From the IMG/VR virus record IMGVR_UViG_3300035070_002626, positions 1 through 64,000 of that record: 64,000 nucleotides of DNA. The stretch is one strand, 5' to 3'. The notes beneath the pieces are model-generated. The model was not told where the DNA came from. It did no database searches and was given only the letters and a program-made list of their open reading frames with translations. Position numbers and translations under genes: made by a program. Positions 1-20,862 of this stretch are shown here, piece by piece. Numbering within the stretch: position 1 is the stretch's first letter; every line of letters starts with the position of its first letter.

Positions 1-267
1 GATGTACCTTGTGTTTTTGATGTTACCCACGCTGTCCAAAAGCCAGGAGGCAATGGGGAATCTAGTGGCGGTAATCGCGATTACGTTCCAGGTCTTGCTC
101 GTGCTGCCGCTGCTATGGGTGTTAGCAACTTCTTCTTAGAAGTACACCCTGATCCAGACAACGCACCTAGTGACGGACCTAATATGCTTAAACTAGAAGA
201 CTTTGAGGATGTGGTTAAACAAATCAAAGTTGTAGGTGACGCAGCAAGAGGATACACCTGGTCATGA
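1..267 (+). CDS. kdsA: KDO-8-phosphate synthase, C-terminal part (5' truncated by window edge)
   Basis: Frame 1 reads [17 protein letters not shown]...[18 protein letters not shown], the KdsA signature; its TGA overlaps the kdsB ATG (ATGA). Confidence 0.93.
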
Positions 268-941
268 CAACAGCAATACTAATACCAGCTAGGTATAACA
301 GCACACGCTACCCTGGTAAACCATTAGCTATGTTAGATGGCGTTCCAATGATAAAGCGTGTGTATGACGCTTGTGTTGCGTCTAACCTACCAACATACGT
401 GCTCACTGATGACATGCGCATCTTTAACTTATTCAATGTTGATAACTGCTGGGTTGATCAAACAGATTATGCCAATGGCACAGAACGATGCGCAGGTGCA
501 GTTAAGAATGACTTCTTTGCAAAATATAATCAGTTCATTAACGTACAAGGTGATATGCCTGATGTGACTTTAGAAATGATTGAAAAAACTAAATGGCATT
601 TACAACACTATTCAGTAACTACCATGTGCGCTATGATGCCAGCAGAACAGCAGAACGATCCAAACTCAGTTAAACTAGTAAGAGCAGCTGATAAGTGTTT
701 GTGGTTTGGTAGAGGCATGACAGGATATGGCGATTGGCACTTAGGCATTTATGGATATAAGCGTAATGCACTAGAAATGTATCCTAATTTGACCAGCACA
801 CGTGAAGAGCGATTAGAAGGTCTAGAGCAACTACGTTGGCTAAAAAATGGATGGGATATAGGTGTATTCCCATGTGTGTTTAATGGTACCGAAATCAATA
901 CACCAGAGGATGCAGAAGCGTGGCACAAAAACTTAAATTAA
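264..941 (+). CDS. kdsB: CMP-KDO synthetase (3-deoxy-manno-octulosonate cytidylyltransferase)
   Basis: [32 protein letters not shown] and LEQLRWL motifs. Confidence 0.93.
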
Positions 942-2458
942 AACGAATACTCGGAGTTAGTGCAGGATTTCATGATGCAGCATTAACTGTGTTGCATGAT
1001 GACGAAATTGTATTTGCTGGCCATAGTGAGCGTTACAGTAAACAGAAAAACGATAATAATATTTGCCTAGAACTTGAGATGGCAGCTCTTGCACACGGTC
1101 CATTTGATAAAATTGTATACTATGAAAAACCGTGGAAACGGCAGTTGCGTAAATTGCTCAGCGGTGAACCCTGGGGCGGTAACTGGCGACTAAGGTCGGA
1201 ACTTAAAAATACAATTCCAATAATAATGTCAGAACACAAAGGTGTTATAACCAGTGTTGGGCATCACATGAGTCACGCTGCTGGTGGATTTCAAACATCG
1301 CCTTACGAAGAAGCTGCTGTTGTTGTAATTGATGCAATCGGCGAAATAGATACTATCAGCATTTACAAAGCTAGATACGACGATGCTACCACTGGTTACT
1401 TGGGGTATAAGAAGCACAGACAGGCCCAGTACAAGCGTGTTTGGTGTCAGCAGTATCCTAACAGCATCGGCATGTACTATAGTGCTGTTACACAGCGTGT
1501 AGGCTTGCGCCCAATGGATGAAGAATACATCACAATGGGTATGGCAGCATATGGCGATGCATCAAAAGCATACCACACGTTGGTTGATAATTTAATAGAC
1601 AACACATCAACAGCAAAATTTAAAAGAAACCTGCACATTGGCATGCAAGACTTGGAGTTTTCTGCAGGCGTTGACGAAATGGATATTGCAGCCGCAGGAC
1701 AGCAACTTTGCGAAGAGCTGATTATGCAAGTGATGCACAAGGCCAAAGAATTAACAGGTTCAAACAATCTTGTTTACATGGGTGGTGTTGCACTTAATTG
1801 TGTAGCGAACAGCAAGCTGGGTGATATTTTTGACAACATATGGATCATGCCCAACCCGGGAGATGCAGGCAGTAGTTTAGGTGCCGCGGCACTAGCATAT
1901 GGTAAAAAGGTCAATTGGCGCACAGCATTACTGGGCACTGATATTCCTGGCAAGTATCCAGTAAAGAAATTAATCAAACAATTAAAGACTAAAAAGATAG
2001 TAGGAGTGGCAAGTGGTAAGGCCGAGTTTGGCCCACGTGCTCTTGGAAACAGAAGTTTACTTGCTGATCCACGTGGTGCCGAAATTAAAGACAAAGTAAA
2101 TGAAATAAAAAAGCGGCAAAAGTTTCGTCCTTTTGCTCCAGTGATACTTGAAGAACATGTACACGATTATTTCAACATGCCAAAAAATCAAAATACATCA
2201 CATTACATGCAGGTAGTAGCGCCAGTTAAACACCCGGACCAGTTTCCTGCTATTACACATGTAGACGGTACAGCAAGAGTGCAAACAGTGCCCAGCGACA
2301 GTAGTGGCATTAGACAATTATTAGAAGCTTGGTACGAAGAAACAGGGTGCCCGATGTTGTTAAACACATCATTGAATATCCGTGGCGAACCAATGGTTGA
2401 TGACAGAGCAGATGCAGATAGATTTGAAAAACAATATGGAGTAAAGGTGTGCAGCTAA
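920..2458 (+). CDS. Carbamoyltransferase, NodU/CmcH/TobZ family (copy 1)
   Basis: HDAA, ERYSKQK, HHMSHA, GGVALNC, EFGPRALGNRS, KRQKFRPFAP, HVDGTARVQTV, LNTSLN. Confidence 0.93.
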   Translation: MAQKLKLKRILGVSAGFHDAALTVLHDDEIVFAGHSERYSKQKNDNNICLELEMAALAHGPFDKIVYYEKPWKRQLRKLLSGEPWGGNWRLRSELKNTIPIIMSEHKGVITSVGHHMSHAAGGFQTSPYEEAAVVVIDAIGEIDTISIYKARYDDATTGYLGYKKHRQAQYKRVWCQQYPNSIGMYYSAVTQRVGLRPMDEEYITMGMAAYGDASKAYHTLVDNLIDNTSTAKFKRNLHIGMQDLEFSAGVDEMDIAAAGQQLCEELIMQVMHKAKELTGSNNLVYMGGVALNCVANSKLGDIFDNIWIMPNPGDAGSSLGAAALAYGKKVNWRTALLGTDIPGKYPVKKLIKQLKTKKIVGVASGKAEFGPRALGNRSLLADPRGAEIKDKVNEIKKRQKFRPFAPVILEEHVHDYFNMPKNQNTSHYMQVVAPVKHPDQFPAITHVDGTARVQTVPSDSSGIRQLLEAWYEETGCPMLLNTSLNIRGEPMVDDRADADRFEKQYGVKVCS

Positions 2459-3294
2459 AACACATAAAAACACGTTACAGTGAAAATTTTGCATATCATG
2501 CAAACGATTCGGTTATTGGCATGCAGTTAACACAGTATGGTGAGTATCAGCAAAGAGAAATCAATCTGTTATCCAATCTAATAAGACACAATGACGTAGC
2601 ATCGGTTGTGTGGGAAGTGGGCGCAAACATTGGAACACATGCTATGGCATTTTCCAAAGTGGCAAAACAAGTTGTATGTTGGGAAGCAAATCCTCAACAC
2701 TTTGCAATATTGAAATTGAATACCAAAGGCAAACTGGCTCCCAATATTCACTGTATTAACAAAGCCATTGGTGCACCTGATGTTGAAACTATTACAGTTG
2801 AGCAGTTCGACGACACAGTGCCTGGCAATTATGGTGCAGCAAGAGTTGGCAGCAAAACTGGAACAGTTGTTGAATGTCGCACACTGGACAGTTATCTAAT
2901 GGAACTGCCGCCACCTAGCGTGGTCAAGATTGATGTCGAGGGACATGAAATTGATGTACTAAAAGGTGCAATTGGTTTGATGTTAATCACAAAGCCAATT
3001 ATCTATATGGAAGCTGGTGAGCAAACTGACACCAGCGAACACTACAACATGCTTGACAAGCACGGATACAAGATGTGGTGGTATGCTTGCCCAAATTACA
3101 ATCCAGAAAATTTCAACAACAACACTGAAAATACCTGGGGCGACACACATATCTTTAGTATACTGGCTATACATGAAAGTGTTACTGGACTTGAAAACAT
3201 TGACTTGCCGCCAGTGGAAGGTCCTGATGATTCGTGGACAAGATTTTGCAATACAATTTCACCGTTAGGGGCCGAAGATTTTGCTGATAGATGA
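2449..3294 (+). CDS. FkbM-family SAM methyltransferase
   Basis: EVGANIG, EANP and KIDVEGHE motifs. Confidence 0.88.
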   Translation: MQLKHIKTRYSENFAYHANDSVIGMQLTQYGEYQQREINLLSNLIRHNDVASVVWEVGANIGTHAMAFSKVAKQVVCWEANPQHFAILKLNTKGKLAPNIHCINKAIGAPDVETITVEQFDDTVPGNYGAARVGSKTGTVVECRTLDSYLMELPPPSVVKIDVEGHEIDVLKGAIGLMLITKPIIYMEAGEQTDTSEHYNMLDKHGYKMWWYACPNYNPENFNNNTENTWGDTHIFSILAIHESVTGLENIDLPPVEGPDDSWTRFCNTISPLGAEDFADR

Positions 3295-3577
3295 TGTCAA
3301 AGAAGCACTACGTCAAGTGCACGATCCAGAAGTTCCAATTAATGTATTTGATTTGGGATTAATCTACAACATTGAAATAACCGGATCGCATTGCATGGTG
3401 GAACACACACTTACTAGCATGATGTGCCCGTTTGCAGATCAAATTTGCAATGACATCGACGTAGCAGTGCAAGGCGTTGAAGGTATTGAAACTGTAGATA
3501 GGCAACTAGTGTTTGATCCACCATTTAGCCTGGACATGGTGCCAGAAGATACTAAAATTATAATGGGCTGGGGTTAG
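3281..3577 (+). CDS. DUF59/SufT-like Fe-S cluster assembly factor
   Basis: DPE..NVFDLGLIY, TLTS..CP, LVFDPP motifs. Confidence 0.88.
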   Translation: MLIDDVKEALRQVHDPEVPINVFDLGLIYNIEITGSHCMVEHTLTSMMCPFADQICNDIDVAVQGVEGIETVDRQLVFDPPFSLDMVPEDTKIIMGWG

Positions 3578-4599
3578 AGATAACTCTCTAATCCACCTTT
3601 GCGCCTAATGTCTTGTGTGCAACAACTAATACCACCATCCCAGAAATAACTGTGACGCAGTTCGCTAATAATAGGATTGATTTTGTGCTTGGCGCAATAA
3701 TCAAATACTTCTTTATTATACGCACTAAAGACAACATTTTCTTCGTCTAACACAAGGCAGTTAACATCGAACACTGTGTCGCTGACAAAGCCAACCCATT
3801 TACTGAGATACTGGTCTACAAAGTTGCTGAATTCTTGTGTTGGGGTTTGTCCTTGCACATACCAAGAGCCGTTGAAGTTTTCTTCTTTAAACTTACCAAC
3901 TTCCATTGCAGCCCAGATACTACTATCCCATATTTTACAAACGTCCCATCCCGGAAAGTCTTCGGCTAAGTTGAGTTGATCATCCCACTTGCTTGAAAGA
4001 ATAACACCTGGTTTGAGAATGGCAAATACAGCATCGCCGTGGCCGTCTGTAATTGCTTCGTGTACACGATATTCTGGGCCTAATGCATTTTCTACAATCC
4101 ATTTAGTTTGATGCGGTTGTAAATAATCGCTATTGTCAAAGAACACGTCACGACCAACACGCACGATGCAACTAGCACTAGCACCATTTAAAATGCAATC
4201 AGGATCAAATGTTTCACCGTGTGGGTTAATAACTTGATCTCCGTATTCGGCACAAATATCATTTAATTCGTCAACTGGCAATACTCGCAACAGCTTGTCA
4301 CCTAAACTAATCTGCCAATCACGTGGTGTAAGCGGAGGCAATGGTGCGCCACCGTCGGCGACTTGGCCTCCTTGGAAATTGTCTTTATCGGGTAAACTAG
4401 GGCGTTTTACAACAGCACCATATTCTTCACAAGTCTTTTGCAAGTTGTCCAAGTCTTCGTTTGTTTCTGCTAAAATTTGTTGTAGCTGGTTACGAACTTG
4501 TGCATCGTCGATAAAGTCAAAGTAGTCAGGTGTGTATGCACGACCAACAATAACTTCTTCCAATGGTTGCCAACTAGTATAGCTGCTTACTTTGCTCAT
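3574..4599 (-). CDS. Amidinotransferase, glycine/inosamine-phosphate amidinotransferase family (copy 1)
   Basis: WQPLEEVIVG, PRD, HGD (catalytic H-x-D), DVNCL, C-terminal GGISCCT (catalytic Cys). Confidence 0.82.
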   Translation of the reverse strand: MSKVSSYTSWQPLEEVIVGRAYTPDYFDFIDDAQVRNQLQQILAETNEDLDNLQKTCEEYGAVVKRPSLPDKDNFQGGQVADGGAPLPPLTPRDWQISLGDKLLRVLPVDELNDICAEYGDQVINPHGETFDPDCILNGASASCIVRVGRDVFFDNSDYLQPHQTKWIVENALGPEYRVHEAITDGHGDAVFAILKPGVILSSKWDDQLNLAEDFPGWDVCKIWDSSIWAAMEVGKFKEENFNGSWYVQGQTPTQEFSNFVDQYLSKWVGFVSDTVFDVNCLVLDEENVVFSAYNKEVFDYCAKHKINPIISELRHSYFWDGGISCCTQDIRRKGGLESYL

Positions 4600-5771
4600 T
4601 TTAATTTTCCTAATATTGTTTCTAATCTATTGGCTTTGCTAGCCAAGAATAACTGTTGATTGTGCAGCAAATCTTCTTTACAATCTATATACATTTGATG
4701 TATTTTTTTAGATTTTGCAATTCGTTCCATTTCGTTGCACACTGCATTCCAGCGCTCAGTGTTGTTAGCAATGTTGTCATAGCTGTGATCAACCACATGA
4801 TCGAATGTCTTGTATCCCATGTCACGTAACTGTTGTATACTACCAGCGGCACCAACAATTACAAATGGCTGTGCATGCTTAATAGGTTTAAATGTTTTTT
4901 CTGTTAAGAACACACCATTGCTTTGATCTACATCTAAATGTGTTTCAATTACAAAATTAAAGTATGCATCGTCGTGATGTGCTGCCACAGTGTGATGGTA
5001 CAAATTATGTTCGTTGCTGCTCAACAGGTCAGCATGGAACGGGCATAGCTTTAAAAAGAATTCGGTGTGATGTCTAAGGCTACCAAAGCTATCAACTTCG
5101 ACTGGATTATCTTCTGGTAAATCACCCACACTAATATCAGCATTGTAACTAAAGAATCCTTTTTCGTGCAACCCTTTCATCCACAGTCTGGTCATTGTAT
5201 TAGCCCGCCACCATTTGTGTGTGCGCACAAGTGCAGTAAAATTTTTACTGCGTGGACGGTCATGGAATTCAGTTGCTAAACCTTCATTACGGAGCCGGTA
5301 TAACAGCTCGTCGTCACATAAGTAGCTGAATTGTGCAAGATCATGGCTTTTAGTGTTTGCGGTGGTAAAATGCAGGTTTTCTGGCGAAATGCCTGCTGTA
5401 ACCATTTGTTTTTTAATATGTTTTTTTATGCGAAAAGGGTTATCTCCTTCGCTGTAGAAAAACCAAATTTTTAGTTGGTTGTCTACGAGACGTTTTACAA
5501 CGTTTTTTGGGATAATATCAAACCATTCCACAGTGAAATCAAAAAAGCTAAGACTAATTGGATATATGCTGCCATTGGGTGCATCATCAGTTTTGACCAC
5601 AGTGTAGTCAATGCCTTCTTGTTTTAGATATTCGTAAAAATGCACTGGTTCGCTAAACGGGCTGTTCAAACTAAATTTGCGCCATTCTGGTGTGTACGGA
5701 GCTGCATCCCAAGTAGCACAGTTAGGAAAAGGCACATCGCCTTTAAATTGATCTGCACAAAATGTTACCAT
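4596..5771 (-). CDS. Putative glycosyltransferase-like protein ('ET..TEK..KPI..PF' family)
   Basis: C-terminal VIET...FLTEKTFKPI...QPF...GYKTF...SYD, reminiscent of the GT-B/GT10 donor-binding motif; start chosen at the ATG overlapping the upstream stop. Confidence 0.5.
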   Translation of the reverse strand: MVTFCADQFKGDVPFPNCATWDAAPYTPEWRKFSLNSPFSEPVHFYEYLKQEGIDYTVVKTDDAPNGSIYPISLSFFDFTVEWFDIIPKNVVKRLVDNQLKIWFFYSEGDNPFRIKKHIKKQMVTAGISPENLHFTTANTKSHDLAQFSYLCDDELLYRLRNEGLATEFHDRPRSKNFTALVRTHKWWRANTMTRLWMKGLHEKGFFSYNADISVGDLPEDNPVEVDSFGSLRHHTEFFLKLCPFHADLLSSNEHNLYHHTVAAHHDDAYFNFVIETHLDVDQSNGVFLTEKTFKPIKHAQPFVIVGAAGSIQQLRDMGYKTFDHVVDHSYDNIANNTERWNAVCNEMERIAKSKKIHQMYIDCKEDLLHNQQLFLASKANRLETILGKLK

Positions 5772-6877
5772 TGATTTGTCATTTCGTTGAGTTCGTCCCA
5801 TAGTATGTTCTCAAACTTGTCACTATAAAACCAGTCGAAGTTGTGTTGTACAGTATTACTTACAGCCTTTTGCAGAGAGGCTTTTTCTTTTTGGCTCATA
5901 TTGTTAATATCGTATAATACTTTGCCGATTTCCTGAGTTCGTCTGTCGTCTTCGTGCTCGTCGTAACTTTCGTCCCAGAATTCGCTGAATGTTTTAAATC
6001 CGTAACGGCGCAAATATTCTAAACTGCCTTTGCAACTCTGTATTATAAACGGCTGTTGCATTACTATAGGCTTAAATGATTTTTCAGTTAAGTGTTGCTT
6101 GTTACCGTCGTACGCTGTTTCTGTTACAACTTGTATTAAACTATTGTTTGCTTGTTCCCATAAATCAATTCTATGACTTTGTGCAGCGTATCCACTACCA
6201 TTGTCAATGGTAAGAGGTAATCGAACATTTGGTACCTGTAAGTTATACTTTTTGCATATAGCATTAATCGACAACCCTTCATATGGGCATGTGTCTGGAA
6301 ATGATATAAGATTTCGGTCCAACATATTTCTGTTTGCAAACTGATTTAAAAGTTCAATTCGATGTCGACGTTCACCACCAATTATATTATTAGGACAAAG
6401 AAATGTATTATATGGCTTGCGCTCTGCAAAAGGTTGTGCTAAACTAGTTCTGTTATATCCCCGATACCAGTCAAGTGCAGCCCATCCATGAAAAAAATAA
6501 TAGTCGCTAGTGAGTCCATAAGTATCACAAGCCCACTGAGCATCTTCGCTATTGTATTCACTGGTAACAAGTCTTTTGATGTTGGACTCAAACATATCTA
6601 AAAATGGTGTGATAAAATTATGAAATCTAAATCTATTCAACACTTCTTGATCCCAGAATATAACTCTAGTGCTATCTTTGGGATTTCCAGTTTGTTCTGG
6701 CAGCATGCTCCAATTGGCAGGCGGTTGACTACGTATGTTTTGAAAATCCGTTGTACCAAAGGGGTCAAACCAGTGCAAACCAACTCGATAGTTGCAATTA
6801 TCTTTGCAGCCTTCGTTGGTCTGTGCCAATGCACGTGGCAGAAAAACATTATCGTAAACTTCGTCGATTCTAATCAT
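5765..6877 (-). CDS. Putative glycosyltransferase-like protein (TEK family paralog)
   Basis: VTET...LTEKSFKPI..QQPF...GFKTF...ESYD. Confidence 0.5.
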   Translation of the reverse strand: MIRIDEVYDNVFLPRALAQTNEGCKDNCNYRVGLHWFDPFGTTDFQNIRSQPPANWSMLPEQTGNPKDSTRVIFWDQEVLNRFRFHNFITPFLDMFESNIKRLVTSEYNSEDAQWACDTYGLTSDYYFFHGWAALDWYRGYNRTSLAQPFAERKPYNTFLCPNNIIGGERRHRIELLNQFANRNMLDRNLISFPDTCPYEGLSINAICKKYNLQVPNVRLPLTIDNGSGYAAQSHRIDLWEQANNSLIQVVTETAYDGNKQHLTEKSFKPIVMQQPFIIQSCKGSLEYLRRYGFKTFSEFWDESYDEHEDDRRTQEIGKVLYDINNMSQKEKASLQKAVSNTVQHNFDWFYSDKFENILWDELNEMTNQW

Positions 6878-8450
6878 GTTTGATAAATTTTATTCCATAG
6901 ACATTAATGAAGCCTGCAAACTCAGCAGGACTAGGTACTTATGGGTATTAGATGACCGGTGTGATTATTCTAACTTTGACTTCTCCTGGGAGCCGGCACC
7001 TTGGGAAAGTGAACAAATACACGTGTGGCCCAGTCAGCACCAAGAAAACTCTGGCACTATGCTTGTCCCAAAACAAGGAGCTGTGGACAAAAACTATAAT
7101 CATGACATTATAAGACACACCGGGCAAGCACCTAGACTGCATATAAAACACAGCCCATCCAGTCCGGACTTGGGTGATATCAACACACGATATATCAGTG
7201 ATTACTTGGGCACAATGCGTCGAGTGTTAAAGAAAGTAGATTGGGAGTATTGTTGGGTTACAGCTGATGTTTGCAATTACGAAGATTTTGATTTCACTTG
7301 GCATCACAGTGAATACCAGCACGACATGCTGCACGTATTTCCTAGCAATGAACAAAAGTTTGGCGATACTTTTTATGTGCATGTGCCTAGTTTTTTAGCT
7401 AAAACAGAAAACTTAAAAATACTTGAATGGTTTGAAACACTGCATTTTGTTACAGATGTTTGGACAGTAAAACGTCAGCCTATGCCTTTTGTTGACTTCG
7501 ACGCAGACACTGTGGTTGATGCAGTATGGCAACACGAATTTGTTGAGCCTTATGCAGTATTTCGTCGTTATGACAATGCGCAGATTGATGTGCCAGCAAT
7601 TAGTTTGTGGCAAGAACAAACCAAGACAGTTGTCCCATTAGTAGCAGGTGCAAGTACTGTATTAATTCCGCGAGAAGTTAAGAATCATTTAAATGAGCAA
7701 ATTTATGACTATCCATGGTTGGATAAAAGCCGTCCTACACTTCCATCTCGGCCTCAGGATATTGTTTATATCAGTTATGATGAAATTGATGCTGAAAAGA
7801 ATTATAATACATTATTAGAAATAACAAAAGATTTGCCTAATACTGTGCATCGTGTGCACGGAGTCAACGGCATGCAACAAGCGTTGCAGGCAGCAAGCTC
7901 AAAAAGCAACACACCCTGGAGTTATCATGTGTTTGCAAAAACTGAACTAAATCCAGAGTTTAAGTTTGACTATGTACCCGATTATATGAAACAACCTAAT
8001 CACTATATTTTTAATTGCAAAAACATGAGCAACAATTTAGTATACGGGCACATGGGAGTTATATTATATAATAATCGCTTGGTAATTGAAAGTGCTGATT
8101 ACAGCGAGCTAGGACTAGACTTCACAATGAGCTTTCCAGTTGAAGTAGTTCCTGAGCTAAGTTGTTATGGAAACTTTGCTACTAGTCCGTATCAAGCTTG
8201 GCGTACTGCATTTAGAGAAGCTAGTAAATTGAGTTACTTCTTGGATGGAAATCCTAACATGGAAGCTCGTCATCGATTGCATGTATGGACCAGCGAAGCA
8301 TACGGCCCACACAGTGAATGGGTGTTAAATGGTGCCCGCGATGGTGTGGAGTTCTTTAAAGCAACTGGTCCAGATTTGCCTAAATTAAAGGCTGCATTTG
8401 ATTGGACCTGGCTGAGACAGTACTTTGATTCTAAGTACGGATCCCTTTAA
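6876..8450 (+). CDS. Multi-repeat GT-A-like protein
   Basis: Three related modules (W-V..D....FDF.W.P......HV(W/F)); C-terminal DIVYISYDE, YGHMGV and AWRTAFRE. Confidence 0.45.
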   Translation: MFDKFYSIDINEACKLSRTRYLWVLDDRCDYSNFDFSWEPAPWESEQIHVWPSQHQENSGTMLVPKQGAVDKNYNHDIIRHTGQAPRLHIKHSPSSPDLGDINTRYISDYLGTMRRVLKKVDWEYCWVTADVCNYEDFDFTWHHSEYQHDMLHVFPSNEQKFGDTFYVHVPSFLAKTENLKILEWFETLHFVTDVWTVKRQPMPFVDFDADTVVDAVWQHEFVEPYAVFRRYDNAQIDVPAISLWQEQTKTVVPLVAGASTVLIPREVKNHLNEQIYDYPWLDKSRPTLPSRPQDIVYISYDEIDAEKNYNTLLEITKDLPNTVHRVHGVNGMQQALQAASSKSNTPWSYHVFAKTELNPEFKFDYVPDYMKQPNHYIFNCKNMSNNLVYGHMGVILYNNRLVIESADYSELGLDFTMSFPVEVVPELSCYGNFATSPYQAWRTAFREASKLSYFLDGNPNMEARHRLHVWTSEAYGPHSEWVLNGARDGVEFFKATGPDLPKLKAAFDWTWLRQYFDSKYGSL

Positions 8451-9309
8451 GGGAATCAATAACATTAGCAACTTCTAATGCATTGCGTATGCCTGTGCTT
8501 GGTGTAGTACGATTAACAACACAATCTACCCAATGCTTTAATTCGTATTCCAAGGGCGAATATTCGTAATCGTATTCATATACTTTAGGGGAAGCATCGG
8601 TTATACTTCTGCGATCTTCTATACTGTGTTTGCTAACAGTAACAGTGTTAGCATCTTGGTCCCAAACAATTTGTCCTTTGGTTCCTAGCAACACAGTGCG
8701 ACGAATACGCACTGGACTATACCAGCTGACATCAATATCGTAACCGGGTGTGCCACTAAACCAAACTCTGTCAGGTACTACATTATTACTGTAGTTCCAA
8801 CTTTGTGCATTGGTTACAGTCATTGGGCCTTGGAAATAATTCACAATGCTGATATCATGTGTTGCTAAACTCAGCACTGGATCTGTTTTAGTCTGATAAA
8901 TTCCCCAATTTGATCTTTCACTGCGAATATAAGTCAAGTCGCCAATGTCGCCGTTATCCAGCATGCTTTTAATCAAATGTATTTGAGGATGGTGCAGGAA
9001 TATGTGACCTACCATTATCAATTGATCATCTTTAAGATGGCTGGCAATGTCTTCAATTTGTTCAGCAGTTTCGGCCATTGGCTTTTCGACATACACATCG
9101 TGCCCACGTTTAACCAGCTCAACTGTTTGCTCGTGGTGCTGCCACAATGGTGTTGCTAGTATAACTGGATCACTGTTGTTGATGTCATTGATGGTTTGGC
9201 CGTTGCGTATGTCAATTACTGTTGCATCAACATCGAACTGCTTCAAGCTTTCAAGGAGTTTACTTCCCCAGTAGCCCGCTCCGACCAAATTCATTTTCAT
9301 GATTTCCAA
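8431..9309 (-). CDS. Gfo/Idh/MocA-family oxidoreductase
   Basis: VGAGYWG, ATP..H, VEKP, MVGH, HD motifs. Confidence 0.9.
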   Translation of the reverse strand: MEIMKMNLVGAGYWGSKLLESLKQFDVDATVIDIRNGQTINDINNSDPVILATPLWQHHEQTVELVKRGHDVYVEKPMAETAEQIEDIASHLKDDQLIMVGHIFLHHPQIHLIKSMLDNGDIGDLTYIRSERSNWGIYQTKTDPVLSLATHDISIVNYFQGPMTVTNAQSWNYSNNVVPDRVWFSGTPGYDIDVSWYSPVRIRRTVLLGTKGQIVWDQDANTVTVSKHSIEDRRSITDASPKVYEYDYEYSPLEYELKHWVDCVVNRTTPSTGIRNALEVANVIDSLKGIRT

Positions 9310-10382
9310 CCTTTAACATTGTCTACTACATAATCAACTTCGCTGTCAGTCATGCTATACCAACACGGTATGCTGAGTATTTCGTCTACAGTGCGCTCAG
9401 TGACTGGCAAACTACGGCTCCACTGTGCAAATGCTGGTTGTTGGTGAGCAGCTCTCATATAATGAATGTTTGTTCCAATGCCAGCGTCATTGAGATGTGC
9501 TTTTAAACTTTCCCTATTGGCAGTTTGTATTACATACACATACCAGCTATGACTGTTACCTTCTACAGTAACAGGCGTTTTAATCACACTTGATAACTGT
9601 TCGGTATAATAGTTACAGATTTCTCTTTTGCGCTCAAGCCAGCCATCTAGCTTGGGCAATTTAGCCATAACAACATTGCTTTGTATGTTGTCAATTCTAG
9701 CATTGTATCCAACTTCTACAATGTTGTAACGACCAGTTCTACCATGATCTCTATACTTGCGAACTTCATTCATGTAATGCTTGCTGCCACTTACTGCGCC
9801 TGCATCACCTACTGCACCCAAATTTTTCACAGGATTAAAGCTCATACAAGTAATGTCACTGAGGCTTCCCACCGGACGACCGTTCCACCGGTTGCCCACA
9901 CTTTGTGCAGCATCCTCTACCATTGCAAGATTGTAATGATTGCATATGCTGCGCACTCGCTCAATGTCGGGGCATTGTCCGTAAATGTCTACAAATAGTA
10001 CAGCACGAGTGTTTTTATTAATCAGTGTTTCCAACTGATCAAGATCAACTAGCCAAGTGTCTGGATCAATGTCGCAGAACACCGGAGTAGCTCCACATAT
10101 AACAATACTTTCGGGCGTAGCAACAAACGTATGGCTCACTGTGATTACTTCATCACCTGGTCCGATGTTCAATGCCCGCATTGCACAATAAAGTCCTGTA
10201 GTGCCGCTACCGCAACTTGCTACATCATCGGCACCAAGGTATTCTGCAAACTTTAGTTCAAATTCTGTAACATCAGGTCCTGTAATAAAACTGTCGATAT
10301 CGAGGCAACGTTGTATTGCTGCATCGATATCTTGTTTACAATCCTGATATTGGGCTTGTAAGTTAGTAAATGGTATTTTCAT
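9297..10382 (-). CDS. DegT/DnrJ/EryC1/StrS PLP-dependent sugar aminotransferase
   Basis: SGT, GPGDEVIT, EDAAQ, SFNPVKNLGAVGDAG (PLP lysine). Confidence 0.93.
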   Translation of the reverse strand: MKIPFTNLQAQYQDCKQDIDAAIQRCLDIDSFITGPDVTEFELKFAEYLGADDVASCGSGTTGLYCAMRALNIGPGDEVITVSHTFVATPESIVICGATPVFCDIDPDTWLVDLDQLETLINKNTRAVLFVDIYGQCPDIERVRSICNHYNLAMVEDAAQSVGNRWNGRPVGSLSDITCMSFNPVKNLGAVGDAGAVSGSKHYMNEVRKYRDHGRTGRYNIVEVGYNARIDNIQSNVVMAKLPKLDGWLERKREICNYYTEQLSSVIKTPVTVEGNSHSWYVYVIQTANRESLKAHLNDAGIGTNIHYMRAAHQQPAFAQWSRSLPVTERTVDEILSIPCWYSMTDSEVDYVVDNVKGWKS

Positions 10383-11428
10383 GCAACTTGTGCTTTGTTA
10401 ACGGCCCAATAACTACTGTTTGTAAGCCAATCATAATAGATTTGAAAGCCTTCATCAATATCAACTTTTGGATCAAATCCAAAGTCTTTTCTTGCTGCAT
10501 CAATGTTTAGTGCACCACGACTTGGGAAGTCGTCGTCTTTTGCATGCATGCTAACTGAGCCTTTACCAGCTAGTTTAACTGCAAGATTTGCAGCCTCTTC
10601 CAGTGTGCAGCTATGACTCTTGGTGAGATTGTATGTGCCAACGTGCTCGCTGAATGTAGCAGCAATCATGCCATCAGCTGCATCATCAACATATGTAAAG
10701 TCCAGTTTCTCTGTAGCACCATTAACTTGAAGTGTTCCACCGGACATTGCACTAATAAGGAATTTGCTGATAACTCTATCACCTACATCTAACGGACCGT
10801 ACACTGCACTAGGACGAACAATCACATAATCTAAGTTGTGTGCACGTTTGTACTGACGCATGATTTGCTCGCCAGCTGCTTTCCAAATTGCATATGCACC
10901 TTGAGGATTTAGTACTGCATCTTCGTTTACATCATCTTCGAAGTCGCCATACACCATGCTAGAACTAGCATACAATACTTTTTTAACACCATGTCGTGCA
11001 CAACATTCCATGATGTTAATCAAGCCCTCGCCCATTGTGTGTGCTGCATCAATTGGGTTGTGCTTTACTGCTTTTTCTCTTGGAAAGCTAGCCAAGTGAA
11101 TAACATAATCTGGATTAAAGCTTGCAAAGACTTCATCAACTTTGCCATCACAAATATCTAATTTATAAATGTGGGTGTCTGGAGAAATCTTTTTAATACG
11201 TTCGTTGTATAGGTACTCTAGTTCTTCTTTGTTGATGCTGTTGTAGGTTGTGAGTACATCGATGATTTGTACTTCATGTCCTACTGATTGCAGCTTTGCG
11301 ACAACATTGTGACCAATAAGCCCCAAGCCGCCTGTTACTAGTACTTTACTTCCTACAGGTAATGTAGCTTCGGTTGCTACTTTTTCTGTTTGTTTTTTCT
11401 TTTGATTTGGGTGCTTCTTTTTAGCCAT
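10379..11428 (-). CDS. NAD-dependent nucleotide-sugar epimerase/dehydratase
   Basis: VTGGLGLIG, SSSMVYG, YAIWK (YxxxK), VYGP, DFTYVDD. Confidence 0.92.
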   Translation of the reverse strand: MAKKKHPNQKKKQTEKVATEATLPVGSKVLVTGGLGLIGHNVVAKLQSVGHEVQIIDVLTTYNSINKEELEYLYNERIKKISPDTHIYKLDICDGKVDEVFASFNPDYVIHLASFPREKAVKHNPIDAAHTMGEGLINIMECCARHGVKKVLYASSSMVYGDFEDDVNEDAVLNPQGAYAIWKAAGEQIMRQYKRAHNLDYVIVRPSAVYGPLDVGDRVISKFLISAMSGGTLQVNGATEKLDFTYVDDAADGMIAATFSEHVGTYNLTKSHSCTLEEAANLAVKLAGKGSVSMHAKDDDFPSRGALNIDAARKDFGFDPKVDIDEGFQIYYDWLTNSSYWAVNKAQVA

Positions 11429-11469: not shown

Positions 11470-12141
11470 CTAGGCTGTGTAGTTTTTAATGTTTGGAAAA
11501 ATATAGTTAATAACTTTTGCACAAGCATGAGCAATTTCCATATGCTCCTTTTGTGTGCCATTGGCACCACGCAAATCAATGTAATGAATCCAACTACGAA
11601 TAGTTCCGTTCATATACAGTCTTGTTTTTGTATTACCCTCGGGCAGCACTGCACGAGCTTGTTCTTTGGCAATGCCGTTTTTGATGGCCCAGTTGTAAGC
11701 TTCGCTGGCTGCATCAATTACTTTTTGCTGTTCAGTTGCCCAGGCATAGTGAATATCTTCTTCGCTGTCGACTTCTACACTGTTCTGCCTGTTCTTTGTA
11801 TCTTGCAAACGTGCTTCACGCAATACAAACATGTCTCCCATTTCTGCAGGATTAGCATAACGTTGACTGAACTCCTGGAATGAAAAACTTCTATGACGCA
11901 CAATTTGATGTGCAATATCACGTGTCGTTTCGATTTCCAAGCAAGCACTAACCATTTCAAATGGTGACCAATGCTGATGTTTAACAAGATAGTTAAGAAG
12001 ACGTTCGCTTGTTTCGTTGTTGATCTGTGCACTGGGATTTGATACCTTAGCGCAAAATGCAATCAAGTCTTGAAGGTCATCCAATCCTTCGGATACCAAG
12101 TCTTCTGTTGCCTTCGAATAGGAAATAAGTTTCACACTCAT
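11470..12141 (-). CDS. thyX: Flavin-dependent thymidylate synthase
   Basis: HWSPFE, RHRSFSFQEFSQRY ThyX motif, EQARAVLP. Confidence 0.96.
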   Translation of the reverse strand: MSVKLISYSKATEDLVSEGLDDLQDLIAFCAKVSNPSAQINNETSERLLNYLVKHQHWSPFEMVSACLEIETTRDIAHQIVRHRSFSFQEFSQRYANPAEMGDMFVLREARLQDTKNRQNSVEVDSEEDIHYAWATEQQKVIDAASEAYNWAIKNGIAKEQARAVLPEGNTKTRLYMNGTIRSWIHYIDLRGANGTQKEHMEIAHACAKVINYIFPNIKNYTA

Positions 12142-19650: not shown

Positions 19651-20844
19651 TTAGAAAATTAATTTTGCAAATTCAGGAAAAGTTTTTTGAAAGTTTTCTT
19701 TGCGAATTTGATCCAACGCCCCGTTTACTTCTAGAAATTTGTCCCATTCGGCAGGATCCCTAGGTTGTTGGATAACATTAGTCAAGTCTTGGAATTCTTC
19801 GTCTTGACTGAGTTTTTCTATCACGGCTGTCTTTACCGATTCAGGCATGTTTTTAATAAACAAGTATGCCGGCTCGACCAGCAAATTCCAGTACGGTGGC
19901 AATGGCAGAATATTCATGATAGCTGCTTTAATTTCGGGTAGATAGAAAATGTTTAATACACCTACAGTGCAGATACAATCAATGTAGTATTTTACATTAT
20001 GCTCTTCAAAATATTTTTTCCAATCTGCGATATTGTTCTTAACAACTTCGTATTTTAACCCATGACGTATGTATTCAAAATGATCAGCAATACCGTCGAT
20101 GCTTACACCAATTTCAACTTCTTGGAAATGTTTAATATTTGGTATTTTGTGCACAATGTTAACACTGCCATTGGTATTGATGTATAATACAATATGAGAT
20201 GAGTGTCCAGTCTTTACTAATTGTTCAAGAAGTTTGATTACTTTTTTATTATACATAGGCTCGCCGCCGAATAATTCAAGACGCTTTAACCCAGGAGCCA
20301 TGTTGAGTATTTCTTCGAGTTGATCATCTGACCAATTTGTTGCAGCCTGATTGGTTACATAGTATTCTTTCCCGGTAAGTTTTTTTAGTTTTACGCTATC
20401 GGCTATCCAGCGATTGCTATCACCTGGATGACACACTCTACATTTAGCATTGCATATGTTTCCATTCTTGATAGTCAACACCTCTGGGCCACTGAGATAG
20501 TCACCGCTGTTAACTCGGTTAATTAATTCGTCAGCATATGTCTCGGAATCAATAAAAGAGTATTCACTTGTTGAATTAACTGGATCAAACAATCGCTGCC
20601 GCAAGCTTTTTTTATTGTTTTCTTCTTCGTGCCAGCAGCGGTTGCACACAGGGCTTTTTTTATTGTTAATAAAGTCCTGGCGCAGTTGTTCAATTTCGCT
20701 GCTACGCCATTGCTCTAGTATGCTGTTGCCTGATGCTTTCCATGTTGTGCCACCAAGATACGGGCAAGGGGAAAAGCTAGTTGACGGATGTGTAGTGCAT
20801 TGTATAAACGGGGCTACACAAAAATTCTCCGTCAACTTTTTCAT
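19651..20844 (-). CDS. Radical SAM protein with N-terminal twitch/SPASM-like Cys motif
   Basis: FCVAPF..PC..C..C N-terminus; CNAKCRVC; GGEP; TNGS; SIDG. Confidence 0.85.
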   Translation of the reverse strand: MKKLTENFCVAPFIQCTTHPSTSFSPCPYLGGTTWKASGNSILEQWRSSEIEQLRQDFINNKKSPVCNRCWHEEENNKKSLRQRLFDPVNSTSEYSFIDSETYADELINRVNSGDYLSGPEVLTIKNGNICNAKCRVCHPGDSNRWIADSVKLKKLTGKEYYVTNQAATNWSDDQLEEILNMAPGLKRLELFGGEPMYNKKVIKLLEQLVKTGHSSHIVLYINTNGSVNIVHKIPNIKHFQEVEIGVSIDGIADHFEYIRHGLKYEVVKNNIADWKKYFEEHNVKYYIDCICTVGVLNIFYLPEIKAAIMNILPLPPYWNLLVEPAYLFIKNMPESVKTAVIEKLSQDEEFQDLTNVIQQPRDPAEWDKFLEVNGALDQIRKENFQKTFPEFAKLIF

Positions 20845-20862
20845 TATATCAACCTTGTATTT

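What the first reader, a model, noticed from the sequence alone, without database searches (positions are those of the whole stretch)
920..11428. Phage pathway for a guanidino/carbamoyl sugar (streptidine-like logic)
Seen: epimerase/dehydratase, DegT aminotransferase, Gfo/Idh/MocA dehydrogenase, three GT-like proteins, an amidinotransferase with intact H-x-D/Cys, an FkbM methyltransferase and a carbamoyltransferase, all next to kdsAB. Established: oxidation then transamination then amidino transfer is how streptidine guanidino groups are made (StrI/StsC/StrB1 families), and NodU/TobZ enzymes O-carbamoylate sugars. Inference: the phage builds a heavily decorated, cationic glycan for the virion, host surface or DNA.
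Basis: partly seen in the sequence, partly recalled or inferred. Interest (0 to 1): 0.75.

Follow-up and report, generated by a model that had tools for sequence, protein, structure and literature searches.

The report
Phage glycan island with amidinotransferase
An uncultured T4-like jumbo phage carries a conserved block of sugar-modifying, sugar-transferring and amidino-transferring genes, back to back with a radical-SAM/carbamoyltransferase operon; it probably builds an unusual cationic glycan or glycoconjugate, but no product is known.

Summary
The four Pfam-blank ORFs are now resolved. One is an AGAT/StrB1-family amidinotransferase (AT). Two are paralogous GT-B proteins nearest to GT10 fucosyltransferases. 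One is a multi-domain GT-A-like protein.

The window starts a 300-kb IMG/VR record of a T4-like jumbo phage. In relatives with full flanks the block is nearly always intact: SDR, DegT, inverted GT-A, GT-B2, GT-B1 and AT upstream, and the carbamoyltransferase (CT) downstream in 74 of 74. So "unlinked in relatives" is refuted.

The pathway logic needs correcting:
- The SDR has an epimerase-type SSS motif, not a dehydratase motif.
- Gfo and its C3-type DegT are a cassette found in only 4 relatives.
- kdsAB, FkbM and SufT are strain-variable.
- CT is not in the AT operon. It ends a convergent operon of N-terminal-twitch radical-SAM paralogues, which also holds an ultra-conserved 33-aa ORF.
- AT, CT and radical SAM stay linked in a distant marine virus that has no detectable homologues of these GT-Bs near its AT.
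- No cyclitol-forming or lipid-carrier genes were found.

A guanidino sugar is plausible but unproven, and a modified-peptide product is a real rival.

The parts
1..267 (+). KdsA (Kdo-8-P synthase), C-terminal part. The gene is cut by the start of the record.
   Evidence: Pfam DAHP_synth_1, 2.3e-13. The full 270-aa gene lies in the 99.9%-identical contig L012:14333-15145, 7.3e-56. Found in only 1 of 84 related loci.
264..941 (+). KdsB (CMP-Kdo synthetase)
   Evidence: Pfam CTP_transf_3, 1.5e-23; NCBIfam KdsB models, 1.6e-48, below their cut-offs. Strain-specific: 1 of 84 loci.
920..2458 (+). NodU/CmcH/TobZ-family carbamoyltransferase (CT1). It is a late gene of the radical-SAM/33-aa-ORF operon.
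   Evidence: Pfam Carbam_trans_C 1.6e-52 and Carbam_trans_N 2.5e-36; phrog_1601 3.8e-107. Present in 74 of 74 relatives with at least 5 kb downstream of AT. Lies directly downstream of the 33-aa ORF on the same strand in 104 of 118 loci.
2449..3294 (+). FkbM-family methyltransferase (variable slot)
   Evidence: TIGR01444, 9.3e-26; Pfam Methyltransf_21, 8.1e-13. Found in 16 of 84 loci at about 38% identity.
3281..3577 (+). SufT/PaaD-type Fe-S cluster assembly protein. It probably serves the radical-SAM enzymes.
   Evidence: Pfam FeS_assembly_P, 3.8e-16; TIGR02945, 2.2e-27. Found in 8 of 84 loci. PaaD was noted in radical-SAM-rich T4-like marine viral genomes in PMC5332604.
3574..4599 (-). Amidinotransferase AT1 (AGAT/StrB1/HsvA/SxtG family), last gene of the GT operon
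   Evidence: PDB phmmer and profile searches. D94, H187, D189 and C326 are conserved. Median 79% identity across 84 loci, against 37-59% for its neighbours.
4596..5801 (-). GT-B glycosyltransferase-like protein 1, GT10-like (an alternative start at M11 gives 4596-5771)
   Evidence: AlphaFold pLDDT 94.9. VIA Z 13.2 to HpFucT 2nzx and 12.3 to T4 BGT. E118, R199, E286, E301 and K302 are invariant in 80 sequences. No Pfam hit.
5765..6877 (-). GT-B glycosyltransferase-like protein 2, paralogue of the previous gene
   Evidence: BLASTP 1e-12 over the TEK region. Aligns full-length in A2 with the same invariant residues. Present in 62 of 62 relatives with full upstream flank.
6876..8450 (+). Multi-domain GT-A-like protein, inverted relative to all its neighbours. 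It is 513-1784 aa long in relatives.
   Evidence: pLDDT 85.9. Foldseek: PcManGT 1e-5, K4CP, SunS, WrtF, Mimivirus R699, PBCV-1 A64R. VIA Z 11.7 for residues 292-435. Invariant V-F-A-K sits where I place the DxD motif, judged from the secondary structure. Present in 62 of 62 relatives.
8431..9309 (-). Gfo/Idh/MocA oxidoreductase, likely a sugar 3-dehydrogenase (strain-specific cassette with the DegT below)
   Evidence: Pfam GFO_IDH_MocA, 4.7e-9. Best NCBIfam is UDP-GlcNAc 3-dehydrogenase, 3.7e-21, far below its cut-off. Found in only 4 loci, all of which carry the window's DegT type.
9297..10382 (-). DegT-family PLP aminotransferase of the C3-aminotransferase group
   Evidence: Pfam 5.5e-103. 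PDB: 7b0d 5e-86, QdtB 7e-77, WbpE 2e-72, DesV 2e-66. Most relatives carry a DegT only about 27% identical to it, with the same PDB ranking.
10379..11428 (-). Extended SDR, NDP-sugar epimerase-like (not a 4,6-dehydratase by motif)
   Evidence: Pfam Epimerase, 6.3e-46. It has GGLGLIG, ASSSMVYG and YAIWK. SSSMVYG is conserved in orthologues. PDB hits are spread over RmlB, UXS and GalE at about 1e-25.
11470..12141 (-). ThyX, conserved flank of the block
   Evidence: Pfam Thy1, 4.7e-44. Found in 44 of 62 relatives.
19651..20868 (-). N-terminal-twitch radical SAM paralogue inside the window
   Evidence: NCBIfam NF033640, 285 bits against a cut-off of 170.
27734..35698 (-). Second AT/CT module. 2OG oxygenase 27734-28456. 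AT paralogue 29559-30587. PMM-like protein 31224-31940. Carbamoyltransferase 2 at 31918-33498. B12-radical SAM 34100-35698.
   Evidence: CT1 and CT2 share 34% identity, 9e-53.

Best explanation
Window 920-11428 is this record's share of a larger decoration island of a T4-like jumbo phage. The island consists of two convergent operons.

Operon A, minus strand: SDR epimerase-like enzyme, then a C3-type DegT aminotransferase (plus a Gfo 3-dehydrogenase in this strain), then GT-B2, GT-B1 and AT. An inverted multi-GT-A gene lies inside it. I read operon A as a nucleotide-sugar tailoring and glycosyl-transfer line.

Proposed steps, all inferred, with no product observed:
1. A host NDP-hexose or NDP-HexNAc is epimerised.
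2. It is oxidised at C3, by Gfo in this strain and by an unknown enzyme elsewhere.
3. It is transaminated to a 3-amino sugar.
4. The amino sugar is transferred by the GT10-like GT-Bs and the GT-A protein to a soluble or protein acceptor.
5. AT moves an amidino group from arginine onto the sugar amine, giving a guanidino group. This could happen at the nucleotide-sugar stage or on the finished glycan.

Operon B, plus strand, of which only the tail lies in the window: N-twitch radical-SAM paralogues, an unknown 358-aa protein, a 33-aa ORF, then in this strain MetK, KdsA and KdsB, then carbamoyltransferase, FkbM and SufT. It supplies further decoration (O-carbamoylation, methylation, radical chemistry) together with its own SAM and Fe-S support. 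It probably works on the same final product.

The target is most likely a virion or other phage-made acceptor, not a lipid-linked host polysaccharide.
For: Shown:
- Family or fold of every gene.
- AT keeps its Cys, its His-x-Asp and the D170-equivalent Asp. It is under strong constraint, 79% identity against 37-41% for the GTs.
- Stop/start overlaps join GT-B2, GT-B1 and AT, and join SDR, DegT and Gfo. The same holds in relatives.
- Block conservation in relatives with at least 8 kb upstream of AT: GT-A 62/62, GT-B2 62/62, DegT 59/62, SDR 57/62. CT is present in 74/74 with at least 5 kb downstream.
- DegT was replaced by a 27%-identical DegT of the same C3 group while the block was kept. This is a non-orthologous swap that keeps the function class.
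- An independent case: cyanophage S-SCSM2R ORF302-310 reads GT, GT25, GT, DegT-like, radical SAM, GT, 2OG oxygenase, AT, GT2.
- The same genome holds further sugar modules: PMM; UDP-Glc/GDP-Man dehydrogenase; a second SDR plus DegT plus a kinase-nucleotidyltransferase fusion.
- No Bac_transf or WecA/MraY-type priming transferase was found, and no ThyA-type hydroxymethylase.
- AT and CT recur as a pair three times: AT1-CT1, AT3-CT2 and AG-345-D19.
Against: - No enzyme in the AGAT/StrB1 family is known to act on a nucleotide sugar or glycan (my own knowledge; the literature searches found none).
- AT scores no closer to StrB1 than to AGAT, HsvA or SxtG.
- The AGAT D254 triad position is Ser or Asn in AT1 and is variable across the viral family. 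AT1 also has Ser where 109 of 120 relatives have His, just before the catalytic Cys.
- In AG-345-D19, where AT is 26% identical, CT and an N-twitch radical-SAM gene remain next to AT, but no homologue of these GT-Bs flanks it. So the oldest partners of AT are CT and radical SAM, not the sugar genes.
- In most relatives no enzyme that would make the keto sugar for DegT has been identified.
- The GT-A protein lacks a canonical DxD motif.
- Synteny within one phage lineage is partly inherited and is not independent evidence.
Confidence: 0.4

Rival explanations
1. Peptide-centred pathway. The ultra-conserved 33-aa ORF in operon B is a precursor or scaffold peptide. It is modified by the N-twitch radical-SAM paralogues, then carbamoylated by CT and amidinated by AT on its many Lys residues. 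It may be glycosylated by the GTs, giving a RiPP-, glycopeptide- or cofactor-like product, comparable to PqqA/PqqE or mycofactocin (MftA, MftC, the glycosyltransferase MftF, the methyltransferase MftM).
For: - The 33-aa ORF occurs in 75 of 84 loci and in at least 120 further contigs.
- It has 60 distinct nucleotide versions with abundant synonymous changes, but an almost invariant C-terminal LEIRYRKKLKELRKRDPFIYK.
- It overlaps its neighbours by 4 nt.
- The 358-aa unknown protein lies directly upstream and CT directly downstream, on the same strand.
- AT, CT and radical SAM stay linked at 26% AT identity, where no homologue of these GT-Bs is detected.
- Glycocin S-glycosyltransferases SunS and ThuS are among the GT-A fold matches.
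- A B12-radical SAM in the second module matches RiPP C-methyltransferase models.
Against: - In known RiPPs (my own knowledge) the core region varies and the leader is conserved, and radical-SAM/SPASM maturases usually target Cys, Trp or Tyr. This peptide has no Cys.
- No peptidase or RiPP-recognition element was found.
- The 358-aa partner has no recognisable family.
- The peptide was not found in AG-345-D19 or in any isolated phage.
- The radical-SAM operon also carries sugar-activation genes: KdsA, KdsB and an RfaE-domain-II-like nucleotidyltransferase.
- It could simply be a small basic nucleic-acid-binding protein.
Confidence: 0.22
2. AT makes a free small guanidino compound, such as guanidinoacetate, homoarginine or an amidinated polyamine like the HsvA product. 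It sits beside the sugar genes only because auxiliary genes accumulate in this hyperplastic region.
For: - All characterised family members act on small amines (my own knowledge).
- AT scores best to AGAT and HsvA.
- The genome has 3-4 AT paralogues in different contexts, often beside 2OG oxygenases rather than GTs.
- S-SCSM2R ORF266 AT lies beside 2OG oxygenases and was found in virion preparations.
- One AG-345-D19 AT lies next to replication genes.
Against: - AT1 specifically overlaps the stop of GT-B1 and is kept in that position in all relatives examined.
- The AT-in-GT-cluster arrangement recurs in S-SCSM2R.
- The neighbours turn over rapidly while the arrangement persists.
Confidence: 0.18
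3. The island remodels the host envelope (LPS, Kdo or capsule) during infection, for example for superinfection exclusion. In this view it does not decorate a phage product.
For: - kdsA, kdsB and an RfaE-domain-II-like nucleotidyltransferase lie in this strain's island.
- S-SCSM2R also has kdsAB beside an AT.
- LPS-type genes are well known in T4-like cyanophages (my own knowledge).
Against: - kdsAB is in only 1 of 84 loci.
- No lipid-carrier priming transferase was found. Flippase, polymerase and ligase genes were not searched for.
- The GTs are virus-specific families.
Confidence: 0.12
4. DNA hypermodification: the GT-B proteins glycosylate phage DNA bases, and AT and CT decorate the adduct.
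For: - T4 beta- and alpha-glucosyltransferases are among the better fold matches, Z 12.3 and 11.1.
- ThyX flanks the block.
- The phage has a T4-like DNA polymerase.
Against: - No ThyA-family hydroxymethylase is present in the 86%-complete record.
- The GT10 fucosyltransferase is the top structural match, and the invariant residues fit its pattern.
- GT-B similarity at this level is generic.
Confidence: 0.05

Closest known systems
Streptidine and bluensidine steps of streptomycin-family biosynthesis: StrI (Gfo/Idh/MocA dehydrogenase), StsC (DegT aminotransferase) and StrB1 (amidinotransferase). Bluensidine additionally bears a carbamoyl group. (My own knowledge.)
   Same: The same three enzyme families lie side by side in the window: Gfo, DegT and AT. 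AT is homologous to StrB1, profile E 7e-26. A carbamoyltransferase is linked to AT.
   Different: - No cyclitol-forming enzyme was found, and no inosamine kinase was identified.
- Gfo is in only 4 of 62 relatives.
- DegT groups with nucleotide-sugar C3 aminotransferases.
- AT is no closer to StrB1 than to AGAT.
- CT lies in another operon.
UDP-sugar C3 oxidation and transamination pairs: WbpB/WbpE (UDP-GlcNAcA) and GnnA/GnnB (UDP-GlcNAc3N). (My own knowledge.)
   Same: A Gfo/Idh/MocA dehydrogenase lies next to a DegT enzyme that matches WbpE at 2e-72 and QdtB at 7e-77. Gfo's best model is UDP-GlcNAc 3-dehydrogenase.
   Different: The Gfo score is far below the family cut-off (75.9 against 450 bits). 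No N-acetyltransferase follows. An amidinotransferase takes the place where an acyltransferase would normally act on the new amine.
Virus-encoded glycosylation machineries: PBCV-1 A064R, Mimivirus glycan clusters including R699, and mycobacteriophage virion glycosylation. (My own knowledge; the PDB entries are among the fold matches.)
   Same: The genes are virus-specific GT-A and GT-B proteins together with sugar-nucleotide tailoring genes, and there is no lipid-carrier pathway. PBCV-1 A64R and Mimivirus R699 are structural matches of the 524-aa protein.
   Different: None of those systems is known to include an amidinotransferase, a NodU-type carbamoyltransferase or an adjoining radical-SAM array. 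The target here is unknown.
Synechococcus phage S-SCSM2R ORF302-310 and ORF264-269 (PMC12801897)
   Same: AT is embedded among GTs, a DegT-like gene, a radical-SAM gene and a 2OG oxygenase. A second AT lies next to KdsA and KdsB.
   Different: That phage belongs to a different lineage. Its nearer AT (ORF266) is 31% identical to AT1, and ORF309 gave no hit in the AT1 search. The gene order differs. The authors read the genes as 'antibiotic synthesis genes' without experiments.
H. pylori alpha-1,3-fucosyltransferase (family GT10)
   Same: It is the best structural match of the 401-aa protein, Z 13.2 over 272 residues. The phage family has invariant Glu, Arg and Glu-Lys residues (E118, R199, E301-K302). 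From memory these parallel HpFucT E95, R195, E249 and K250.
   Different: The Pfam GT10 model does not match. Identity is about 8%. The residue correspondence was not verified in a structural alignment, and the donor sugar is unknown.

Membership tests
AGAT/StrB1 amidinotransferase family (guanidino-group-modifying enzyme superfamily) | End-to-end sequence homology to characterised amidinotransferases | tested here: met
   phmmer: AGAT 2.1e-15, StrB1 8.4e-12. Profile: AGAT 1.7e-33, HsvA 2.2e-29, SxtG 9.9e-28, StrB1 6.9e-26. The match includes the N-terminal VSSY..W.PLEEVIVG motif and the C-terminus.
AGAT/StrB1 amidinotransferase family (guanidino-group-modifying enzyme superfamily) | Catalytic Cys nucleophile (AGAT C407) | tested here: met
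   C326 aligns to the Cys of AGAT 'GGFHCWT'. The column is Cys in 118 of 120 viral-family sequences.
AGAT/StrB1 amidinotransferase family (guanidino-group-modifying enzyme superfamily) | Catalytic His and the two guanidinium-binding Asp residues (AGAT H303, D305, D170) | tested here: met
   H187-G-D189 aligns to MHID, and P-R-D94 aligns to PRD170. In the family the columns are H in 118/120, D in 120/120 and D in 116/120.
AGAT/StrB1 amidinotransferase family (guanidino-group-modifying enzyme superfamily) | Third triad residue (AGAT D254) | tested here: not met
   The HMM alignment places S141 there. MAFFT with the paralogues places N138, where the paralogues have D or E. Neither column is conserved in the viral family, while D321, a residue specific to this family, is nearly invariant. 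The consequence for catalysis is unknown.
AGAT/StrB1 amidinotransferase family (guanidino-group-modifying enzyme superfamily) | Arginine as donor, transfer to an amine acceptor rather than hydrolysis | not testable with these tools
   This needs an enzyme assay.
Streptidine-type aminocyclitol pathway | A source of cyclitol (inositol-1-P synthase or a DOI/DHQ-type synthase) | tested here: not met
   PF01658 and PF01761 are absent from the 300-kb record, which is 86% complete.
Streptidine-type aminocyclitol pathway | The dehydrogenase, aminotransferase and amidinotransferase trio is conserved together | tested here: not met
   DegT and AT are conserved together (59 of 62), but Gfo is in only 4 of 62 relatives.
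NodU/CmcH/TobZ carbamoyltransferases | Both Pfam domains above the gathering scores | tested here: met
   Carbam_trans_C 177.9 bits against 27; Carbam_trans_N 126.3 bits against 24. The NodU equivalog model itself is far below its cut-off, 145.7 against 1000.
GT10 fucosyltransferases (GT-B) | GT-B two-Rossmann fold with GT10 as the nearest structure | tested here: met
   VIA Z 13.2, 12.9 and 12.5 to HpFucT entries; FUT9 11.2.
GT10 fucosyltransferases (GT-B) | Match to the family sequence model PF00852 | tested here: not met
   No Pfam hit even at E up to 10. PF00852 finds nothing in the whole record. The Atlas feature score to GT10 clusters is only 0.78-0.79.
GT2-like GT-A glycosyltransferases | GT-A fold | tested here: met
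   Residues 292-435: Z 11.7 to B4GALNT1, 11.5 to 6p61, 10.9 to WrtF, 10.6 to SpsA. Foldseek probability is 1.00 for several GT-A enzymes.
GT2-like GT-A glycosyltransferases | DxD metal- and nucleotide-binding motif | tested here: not met
   After the third strand of the domain the invariant residues are V352-F353-A354-K355. The position was judged from secondary structure, not from a residue-level superposition. PF00535 gives no hit over its cut-off.
NDP-hexose 4,6-dehydratases (RmlB type) | The Thr-Asp-Glu catalytic motif in addition to YxxxK | tested here: not met
   The window SDR has A-S-S-S-M-V-Y-G and Y178-x-x-x-K182. SSSMVYG is conserved in orthologues. This is the GalE/WbpP-type pattern (my own knowledge).
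N-terminal-twitch radical SAM (NCBIfam NF033640) | Score above the curated cut-off (170 bits) | tested here: met
   285-335 bits for five paralogues, including window 19651-20868. Eight places in the record match, three of them over the cut-off. None of 14 control genomes scores over the cut-off.

The most novel reading that the evidence does not exclude
A widespread lineage of uncultured T4-like jumbo phages makes a product class not yet described for viruses. One form would be a guanidino- and carbamoyl-bearing glycan displayed on the virion. The other would be a glycosylated, amidinated and carbamoylated peptide derived from the ultra-conserved 33-aa ORF and matured by a battery of N-terminal-twitch radical-SAM enzymes. 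Either way it would be the first AGAT-family enzyme acting on a sugar or a peptide.
Probability: 0.25. Interest if true: 0.85.

Novelty: new variant of a known kind. Interest (0 to 1): 0.6.

Why it matters
Virus-encoded glycosylation is established for giant viruses and a few phages, but an amidinotransferase wired into a glycosyltransferase operon has not been described. If AT1 amidinates an amino sugar, it would add a new reaction to a family known only for small amines and inosamine phosphate. It would also define a new cationic sugar and give a handle on how abundant environmental jumbo phages decorate their particles or products.

The block is common: 494 AT-encoding stretches in IMG/VR, and at least 120 contigs carrying the 33-aa ORF. 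The enzymes are small and soluble-looking, so the question can be tested directly by heterologous expression even though no isolate exists. The adjoining radical-SAM operon, which carries its own MetK, MTA/5'-dA nucleosidase and SufT, is an unstudied enzyme set of comparable interest.

Tried and rejected
- Megablast of window 1-12000 against GenBank phages: no match.
- Pfam, NCBIfam and PHROGs gave nothing useful for the four blank ORFs. PF00852 found nothing in the record.
- Contexts of distant AT homologues (P0132, P0133, P0137): short contigs of ORFans, uninformative.
- Genome-contig scan: only three hits. One is a 148-kb contig with a 77%-identical AT, binned in a Haliscomenobacter MAG. 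I did not test whether it is a mis-binned phage contig or a host hint. The second is a 24%-identical Clostridia homologue beside very large ORFs. The third is a fragment.
- Single-protein search for AT3 relatives: only 3 near-identical loci.
- T4 late-promoter motif TATAAATA: 2 sites in 64 kb against 5.4 expected. The sigma-70 and terminator scans were at chance level. No timing information could be drawn.
- Complex prediction of the 358-aa protein, an N-twitch radical-SAM enzyme and the small peptide: no verdict (score 0.00, low pLDDT). This is not evidence either way.
- Atlas search for the 358-aa protein: noise-level hits.
- tblastn of the 33-aa peptide against isolated phages: no match, and the low-complexity filter may have masked the query.
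- Literature searches for guanidino sugars, AT in polysaccharide loci, N-twitch radical SAM in phages, and cyanophage radical SAM with carbamoyltransferase: nothing relevant.
- Cyclitol (true streptidine) reading rejected: no inositol-1-P synthase or DOI/DHQ synthase.
- SDR as a 4,6-dehydratase rejected on its motif.
The D254 question therefore rests on alignments only.

Full report
**What the window is.** The window is bases 1-64000 of a 299,910-bp linear IMG/VR virus record, estimated 86% complete. GC content is about 40%. Its 886-aa DNA polymerase is T4-like. The nearest isolates are jumbo myoviruses: Sinorhizobium phage Phosso (52% identity), Agrobacterium phage Atu_ph07 and Vibrio phage 2.275.O. 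The two ends of the record do not join. A 99.9%-identical contig, L012, runs 6.4 kb past the window start.

**Checking the observation.** All the named genes are present at the stated coordinates:
- kdsA C-terminus, 1-267
- kdsB, 264-941
- carbamoyltransferase (CT), 920-2458
- FkbM methyltransferase, 2449-3294
- Gfo/Idh/MocA, 8431-9309
- DegT, 9297-10382
- SDR, 10379-11428

**The amidinotransferase.** ORF 3574-4599 (341 aa) matches solved amidinotransferases. With the single sequence it matches AGAT at 2e-15 and StrB1 at 8e-12. With a profile of nine viral homologues it matches AGAT at 1.7e-33, HsvA at 2e-29, SxtG at 1e-27 and StrB1 at 7e-26.

I mapped residues using the residue numbering of chain 1jdw, and took the roles of the AGAT residues from my own knowledge of the AGAT structure papers.
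- D94 corresponds to D170.
- H187 and D189 correspond to H303 and D305.
- C326 corresponds to C407.

These four columns are nearly invariant in 120 diverse viral-family members. The third triad residue, D254, is not conserved. The HMM alignment puts S141 there, and MAFFT puts N138. Both columns vary across the family, while a family-specific D321 is almost invariant. AT1 also has Ser where 109 of 120 relatives have His, immediately before the catalytic Cys. The enzyme is clearly a member of the family and under strong constraint, but its exact chemistry and acceptor are open.

**The three GT-like proteins.**
- The 401-aa protein was folded with an 80-sequence alignment (pLDDT 94.9). It is a GT-B. 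The best matches are H. pylori alpha-1,3-fucosyltransferase (Z 13.2), T4 beta-glucosyltransferase (12.3), exostosins, Gtf3 and FUT9.
- The 370-aa protein is its paralogue. Both families share invariant E118, R199, E286 and T-E301-K302. From memory this pattern matches the catalytic and diphosphate-binding residues of GT10 enzymes. The Pfam GT10 model does not match.
- The 524-aa protein (pLDDT 85.9) has a GT-A domain at residues 292-435, with Z up to 11.7. Its overall arrangement resembles multi-GT-A proteins such as K4CP, LH3 and Mimivirus R699. Invariant V-F-A-K stands where I place the DxD motif, judged from the secondary structure.

Catalytic competence is inferred, not shown.

**The sugar-tailoring genes.**
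- The DegT ranks with C3 aminotransferases: 7b0d at 5e-86, QdtB at 7e-77, WbpE at 2e-72 and DesV at 2e-66.
- Gfo's best model is UDP-GlcNAc 3-dehydrogenase (3.7e-21, far below the cut-off). Oxidation followed by transamination at C3 is a reasonable reading for this strain.
- The SDR has ASSSMVYG plus YxxxK, and the SSSMVYG part is conserved in orthologues. That is the epimerase pattern, not the T-D-E of 4,6-dehydratases. I therefore do not accept it as the source of a keto sugar.

**Relatives and synteny.** AT1 has 1,842 hits in the 5.8-billion-protein set. The best 120 are 79-91% identical and lie on contigs up to 350 kb. IMG/VR holds 494 encoding stretches. I compared 84 loci.

Presence of each gene in relatives with enough flank:

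| Gene | Loci with at least 8 kb upstream of AT (n = 62) |
|---|---|
| GT-A | 62 |
| GT-B2 | 62 |
| DegT | 59 |
| SDR | 57 |
| GT-B1 | 51 |
| ThyX | 44 |
| Gfo | 4 |

CT is present in 74 of 74 loci with at least 5 kb downstream of AT.

Median identity to the window's proteins:

| Protein | Median identity |
|---|---|
| AT | 79% |
| CT | 59% |
| SDR | 56% |
| GT-B1 | 41% |
| GT-A | 39% |
| GT-B2 | 37% |
| DegT | 27% |

- Most relatives carry a different DegT of the same C3 group.
- Gfo travels only with the window's DegT type.
- kdsAB (1 locus), FkbM (16) and SufT (8) are variable.

The rapid turnover of GTs around a constant AT resembles a diversifying glycan locus.

**Two operons, not one.** Gene orientation and overlaps show that AT is the last gene of a minus-strand unit: GT-B2, GT-B1, AT. 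The SDR-DegT(-Gfo) unit lies upstream on the same strand, and the GT-A gene is inverted between the two.

CT is a late gene of a convergent plus-strand operon. In relatives this operon runs through four to six radical-SAM genes, an unknown gene of about 360 aa, a 33-aa ORF, sometimes DUF1289, and then CT. In this strain L012 shows the same operon with extra genes:
- MetK
- an MTA/SAH-type nucleosidase
- an RfaE-domain-II-like nucleotidyltransferase
- KdsA and KdsB
- FkbM and SufT

The radical-SAM genes belong to NCBIfam NF033640 (N-terminal twitch), scoring 285-335 bits against a cut-off of 170. At least eight places in the record match, and none of 14 control genomes scores over the cut-off. 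MetK, the nucleosidase and SufT look like support for radical-SAM chemistry. PaaD-type genes were noted in radical-SAM-rich T4-like marine viral genomes before (PMC5332604).

**Independent contexts for AT.**
1. In Synechococcus phage S-SCSM2R an "inosamine amidinotransferase" lies inside a co-directional run: GT, GT25, GT, DegT-like, radical SAM, GT, 2OG oxygenase, AT, GT2. A second AT lies next to KdsA and KdsB and two 2OG oxygenases. The authors called these "antibiotic synthesis genes" and found the second AT in virion preparations.
2. In marine virus AG-345-D19 an AT only 26% identical lies two genes from a CT that is 51% identical to the relatives' CT. An N-twitch radical-SAM fragment sits beyond the CT, in a rearranged order. 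No homologue of these GT-Bs flanks that AT, although two of its neighbours have no recognisable family.
3. In the window itself a third AT paralogue (29559-30587) sits two genes from a second CT (31918-33498, 34% identical to CT1). A PMM-like gene, a B12-radical SAM and a 2OG oxygenase lie nearby.

AT therefore recurs both with GTs and DegT and with CT and radical SAM. The second association is the deeper one.

**What is absent.** The record has no ThyA-type hydroxymethylase. It has no DOI/DHQ synthase or inositol-1-P synthase. It has no Bac_transf or WecA/MraY-type priming transferase. This argues against DNA glycosylation of hydroxymethyl bases, against an aminocyclitol, and against phage-encoded lipid-linked assembly. 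The record is only 86% complete, so each absence is weak evidence.

**The 33-aa ORF.** It lies just outside the window, at L012:16209-16307.
- It occurs in 75 of 84 loci, and its back-translated motif hits at least 120 further viral contigs.
- Sixty distinct nucleotide versions carry many synonymous changes, yet the C-terminal 22 residues (LEIRYRKKLKELRKRDPFIYK, then stop) are almost invariant.
- All 193 copies end at the same residue.
- It overlaps both neighbours by 4 nt.

It is the most conserved element of the island and may be a substrate or scaffold peptide. This is the basis of the main rival explanation.

**Conclusion.** The best-supported reading (confidence 0.4) is a phage-encoded glycan or glycoconjugate decoration island. 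In it an amino sugar is made, transferred by virus-specific GTs and amidinated by AT1, with carbamoylation, methylation and radical-SAM steps supplied by the adjoining operon. Every step beyond family and fold assignment is inferred.

Rivals:
- a peptide-centred product (0.22)
- a free guanidino metabolite (0.18)
- host-envelope remodelling (0.12)
- DNA modification (0.05)

The finding is real, conserved and unusual, but its chemistry is undetermined.

Noticed in passing
L012:16209-16307 (-), just beyond the window start; also L008:13312-13413 (-) and L010:13889-13990 (-): An ultra-conserved 33-aa ORF (M.W....I..I.LEIRYRKKLKELRKRDPFIYK) lies inside the radical-SAM operon, between an unknown gene of about 360 aa and the carbamoyltransferase. 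It has 60 nucleotide versions with many synonymous changes but a nearly invariant C-terminal 22 residues. It occurs in 75 of 84 loci and in at least 120 more viral contigs.
   Followed up: partly
window 27734-35698 (-): A second AT/CT module. It holds an Asp/Arg-hydroxylase-type 2OG oxygenase (27734-28456), an AT paralogue (29559-30587), a PMM-like HAD protein (31224-31940), carbamoyltransferase 2 (31918-33498) and a B12-binding radical SAM (34100-35698). The last matches P-/C-methyltransferase and RiPP C-methyltransferase models.
   Followed up: partly
G000:C1:293159-299910 (+), the far end of the record (L007): N-terminal-twitch radical-SAM paralogues surround another AT paralogue (295803-296792, 33% identical to AT1). 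In relatives these genes lie next to the carbamoyltransferase. The record is therefore cut inside the island, and several kb are missing between its two ends.
   Followed up: partly
L012:15124-20881 (-): The phage encodes SAM synthetase (MetK), an MTA/SAH-type nucleosidase and an RfaE-domain-II-like nucleotidyltransferase interleaved with the radical-SAM genes. The SufT gene lies in the window at 3281-3577. Together they look like a self-supplied support kit for radical-SAM chemistry.
   Followed up: partly
window 6876-6877 and 8431-8450: The GT-A gene is inverted relative to all its neighbours. Its start overlaps the start of the divergent GT-B2 gene by 2 bp, leaving no intergenic promoter space. 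Its end overlaps the convergent Gfo gene by 20 bp. The inverted orientation is kept in relatives, where the protein ranges from 513 to 1784 aa.
   Followed up: no
G000:C1:127930-130584 and 190425-194435: Further sugar modules elsewhere in the genome. The first holds a weak AT-like ORF, a 2OG oxygenase and a UDP-Glc/GDP-Man dehydrogenase. The second holds an SDR, a second DegT and a fused NTP-transferase/APH-type kinase.
   Followed up: partly
window 3574-4599 (AT1 residues 138-141, 321, 325): Viral-family ATs lack a conserved equivalent of AGAT D254 but have a nearly invariant Asp (D321) five residues before the catalytic Cys. AT1 orthologues have Ser instead of the usual His directly before that Cys.
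   Followed up: partly
L102 (NZ_JBBAKG010000003.1, 148 kb): A contig carrying a 77%-identical AT is binned in a Haliscomenobacter sp. MAG. It may be a mis-binned phage contig or a weak host hint. I did not test this.
   Followed up: no
window 13676-14923 and 17982-19073 (-): A DUF2201 metallopeptidase/VWA protein and a MoxR-type AAA ATPase lie close to the island. From my own knowledge this resembles the CobT/CobS-like pair common in marine T4-like phages.
   Followed up: no
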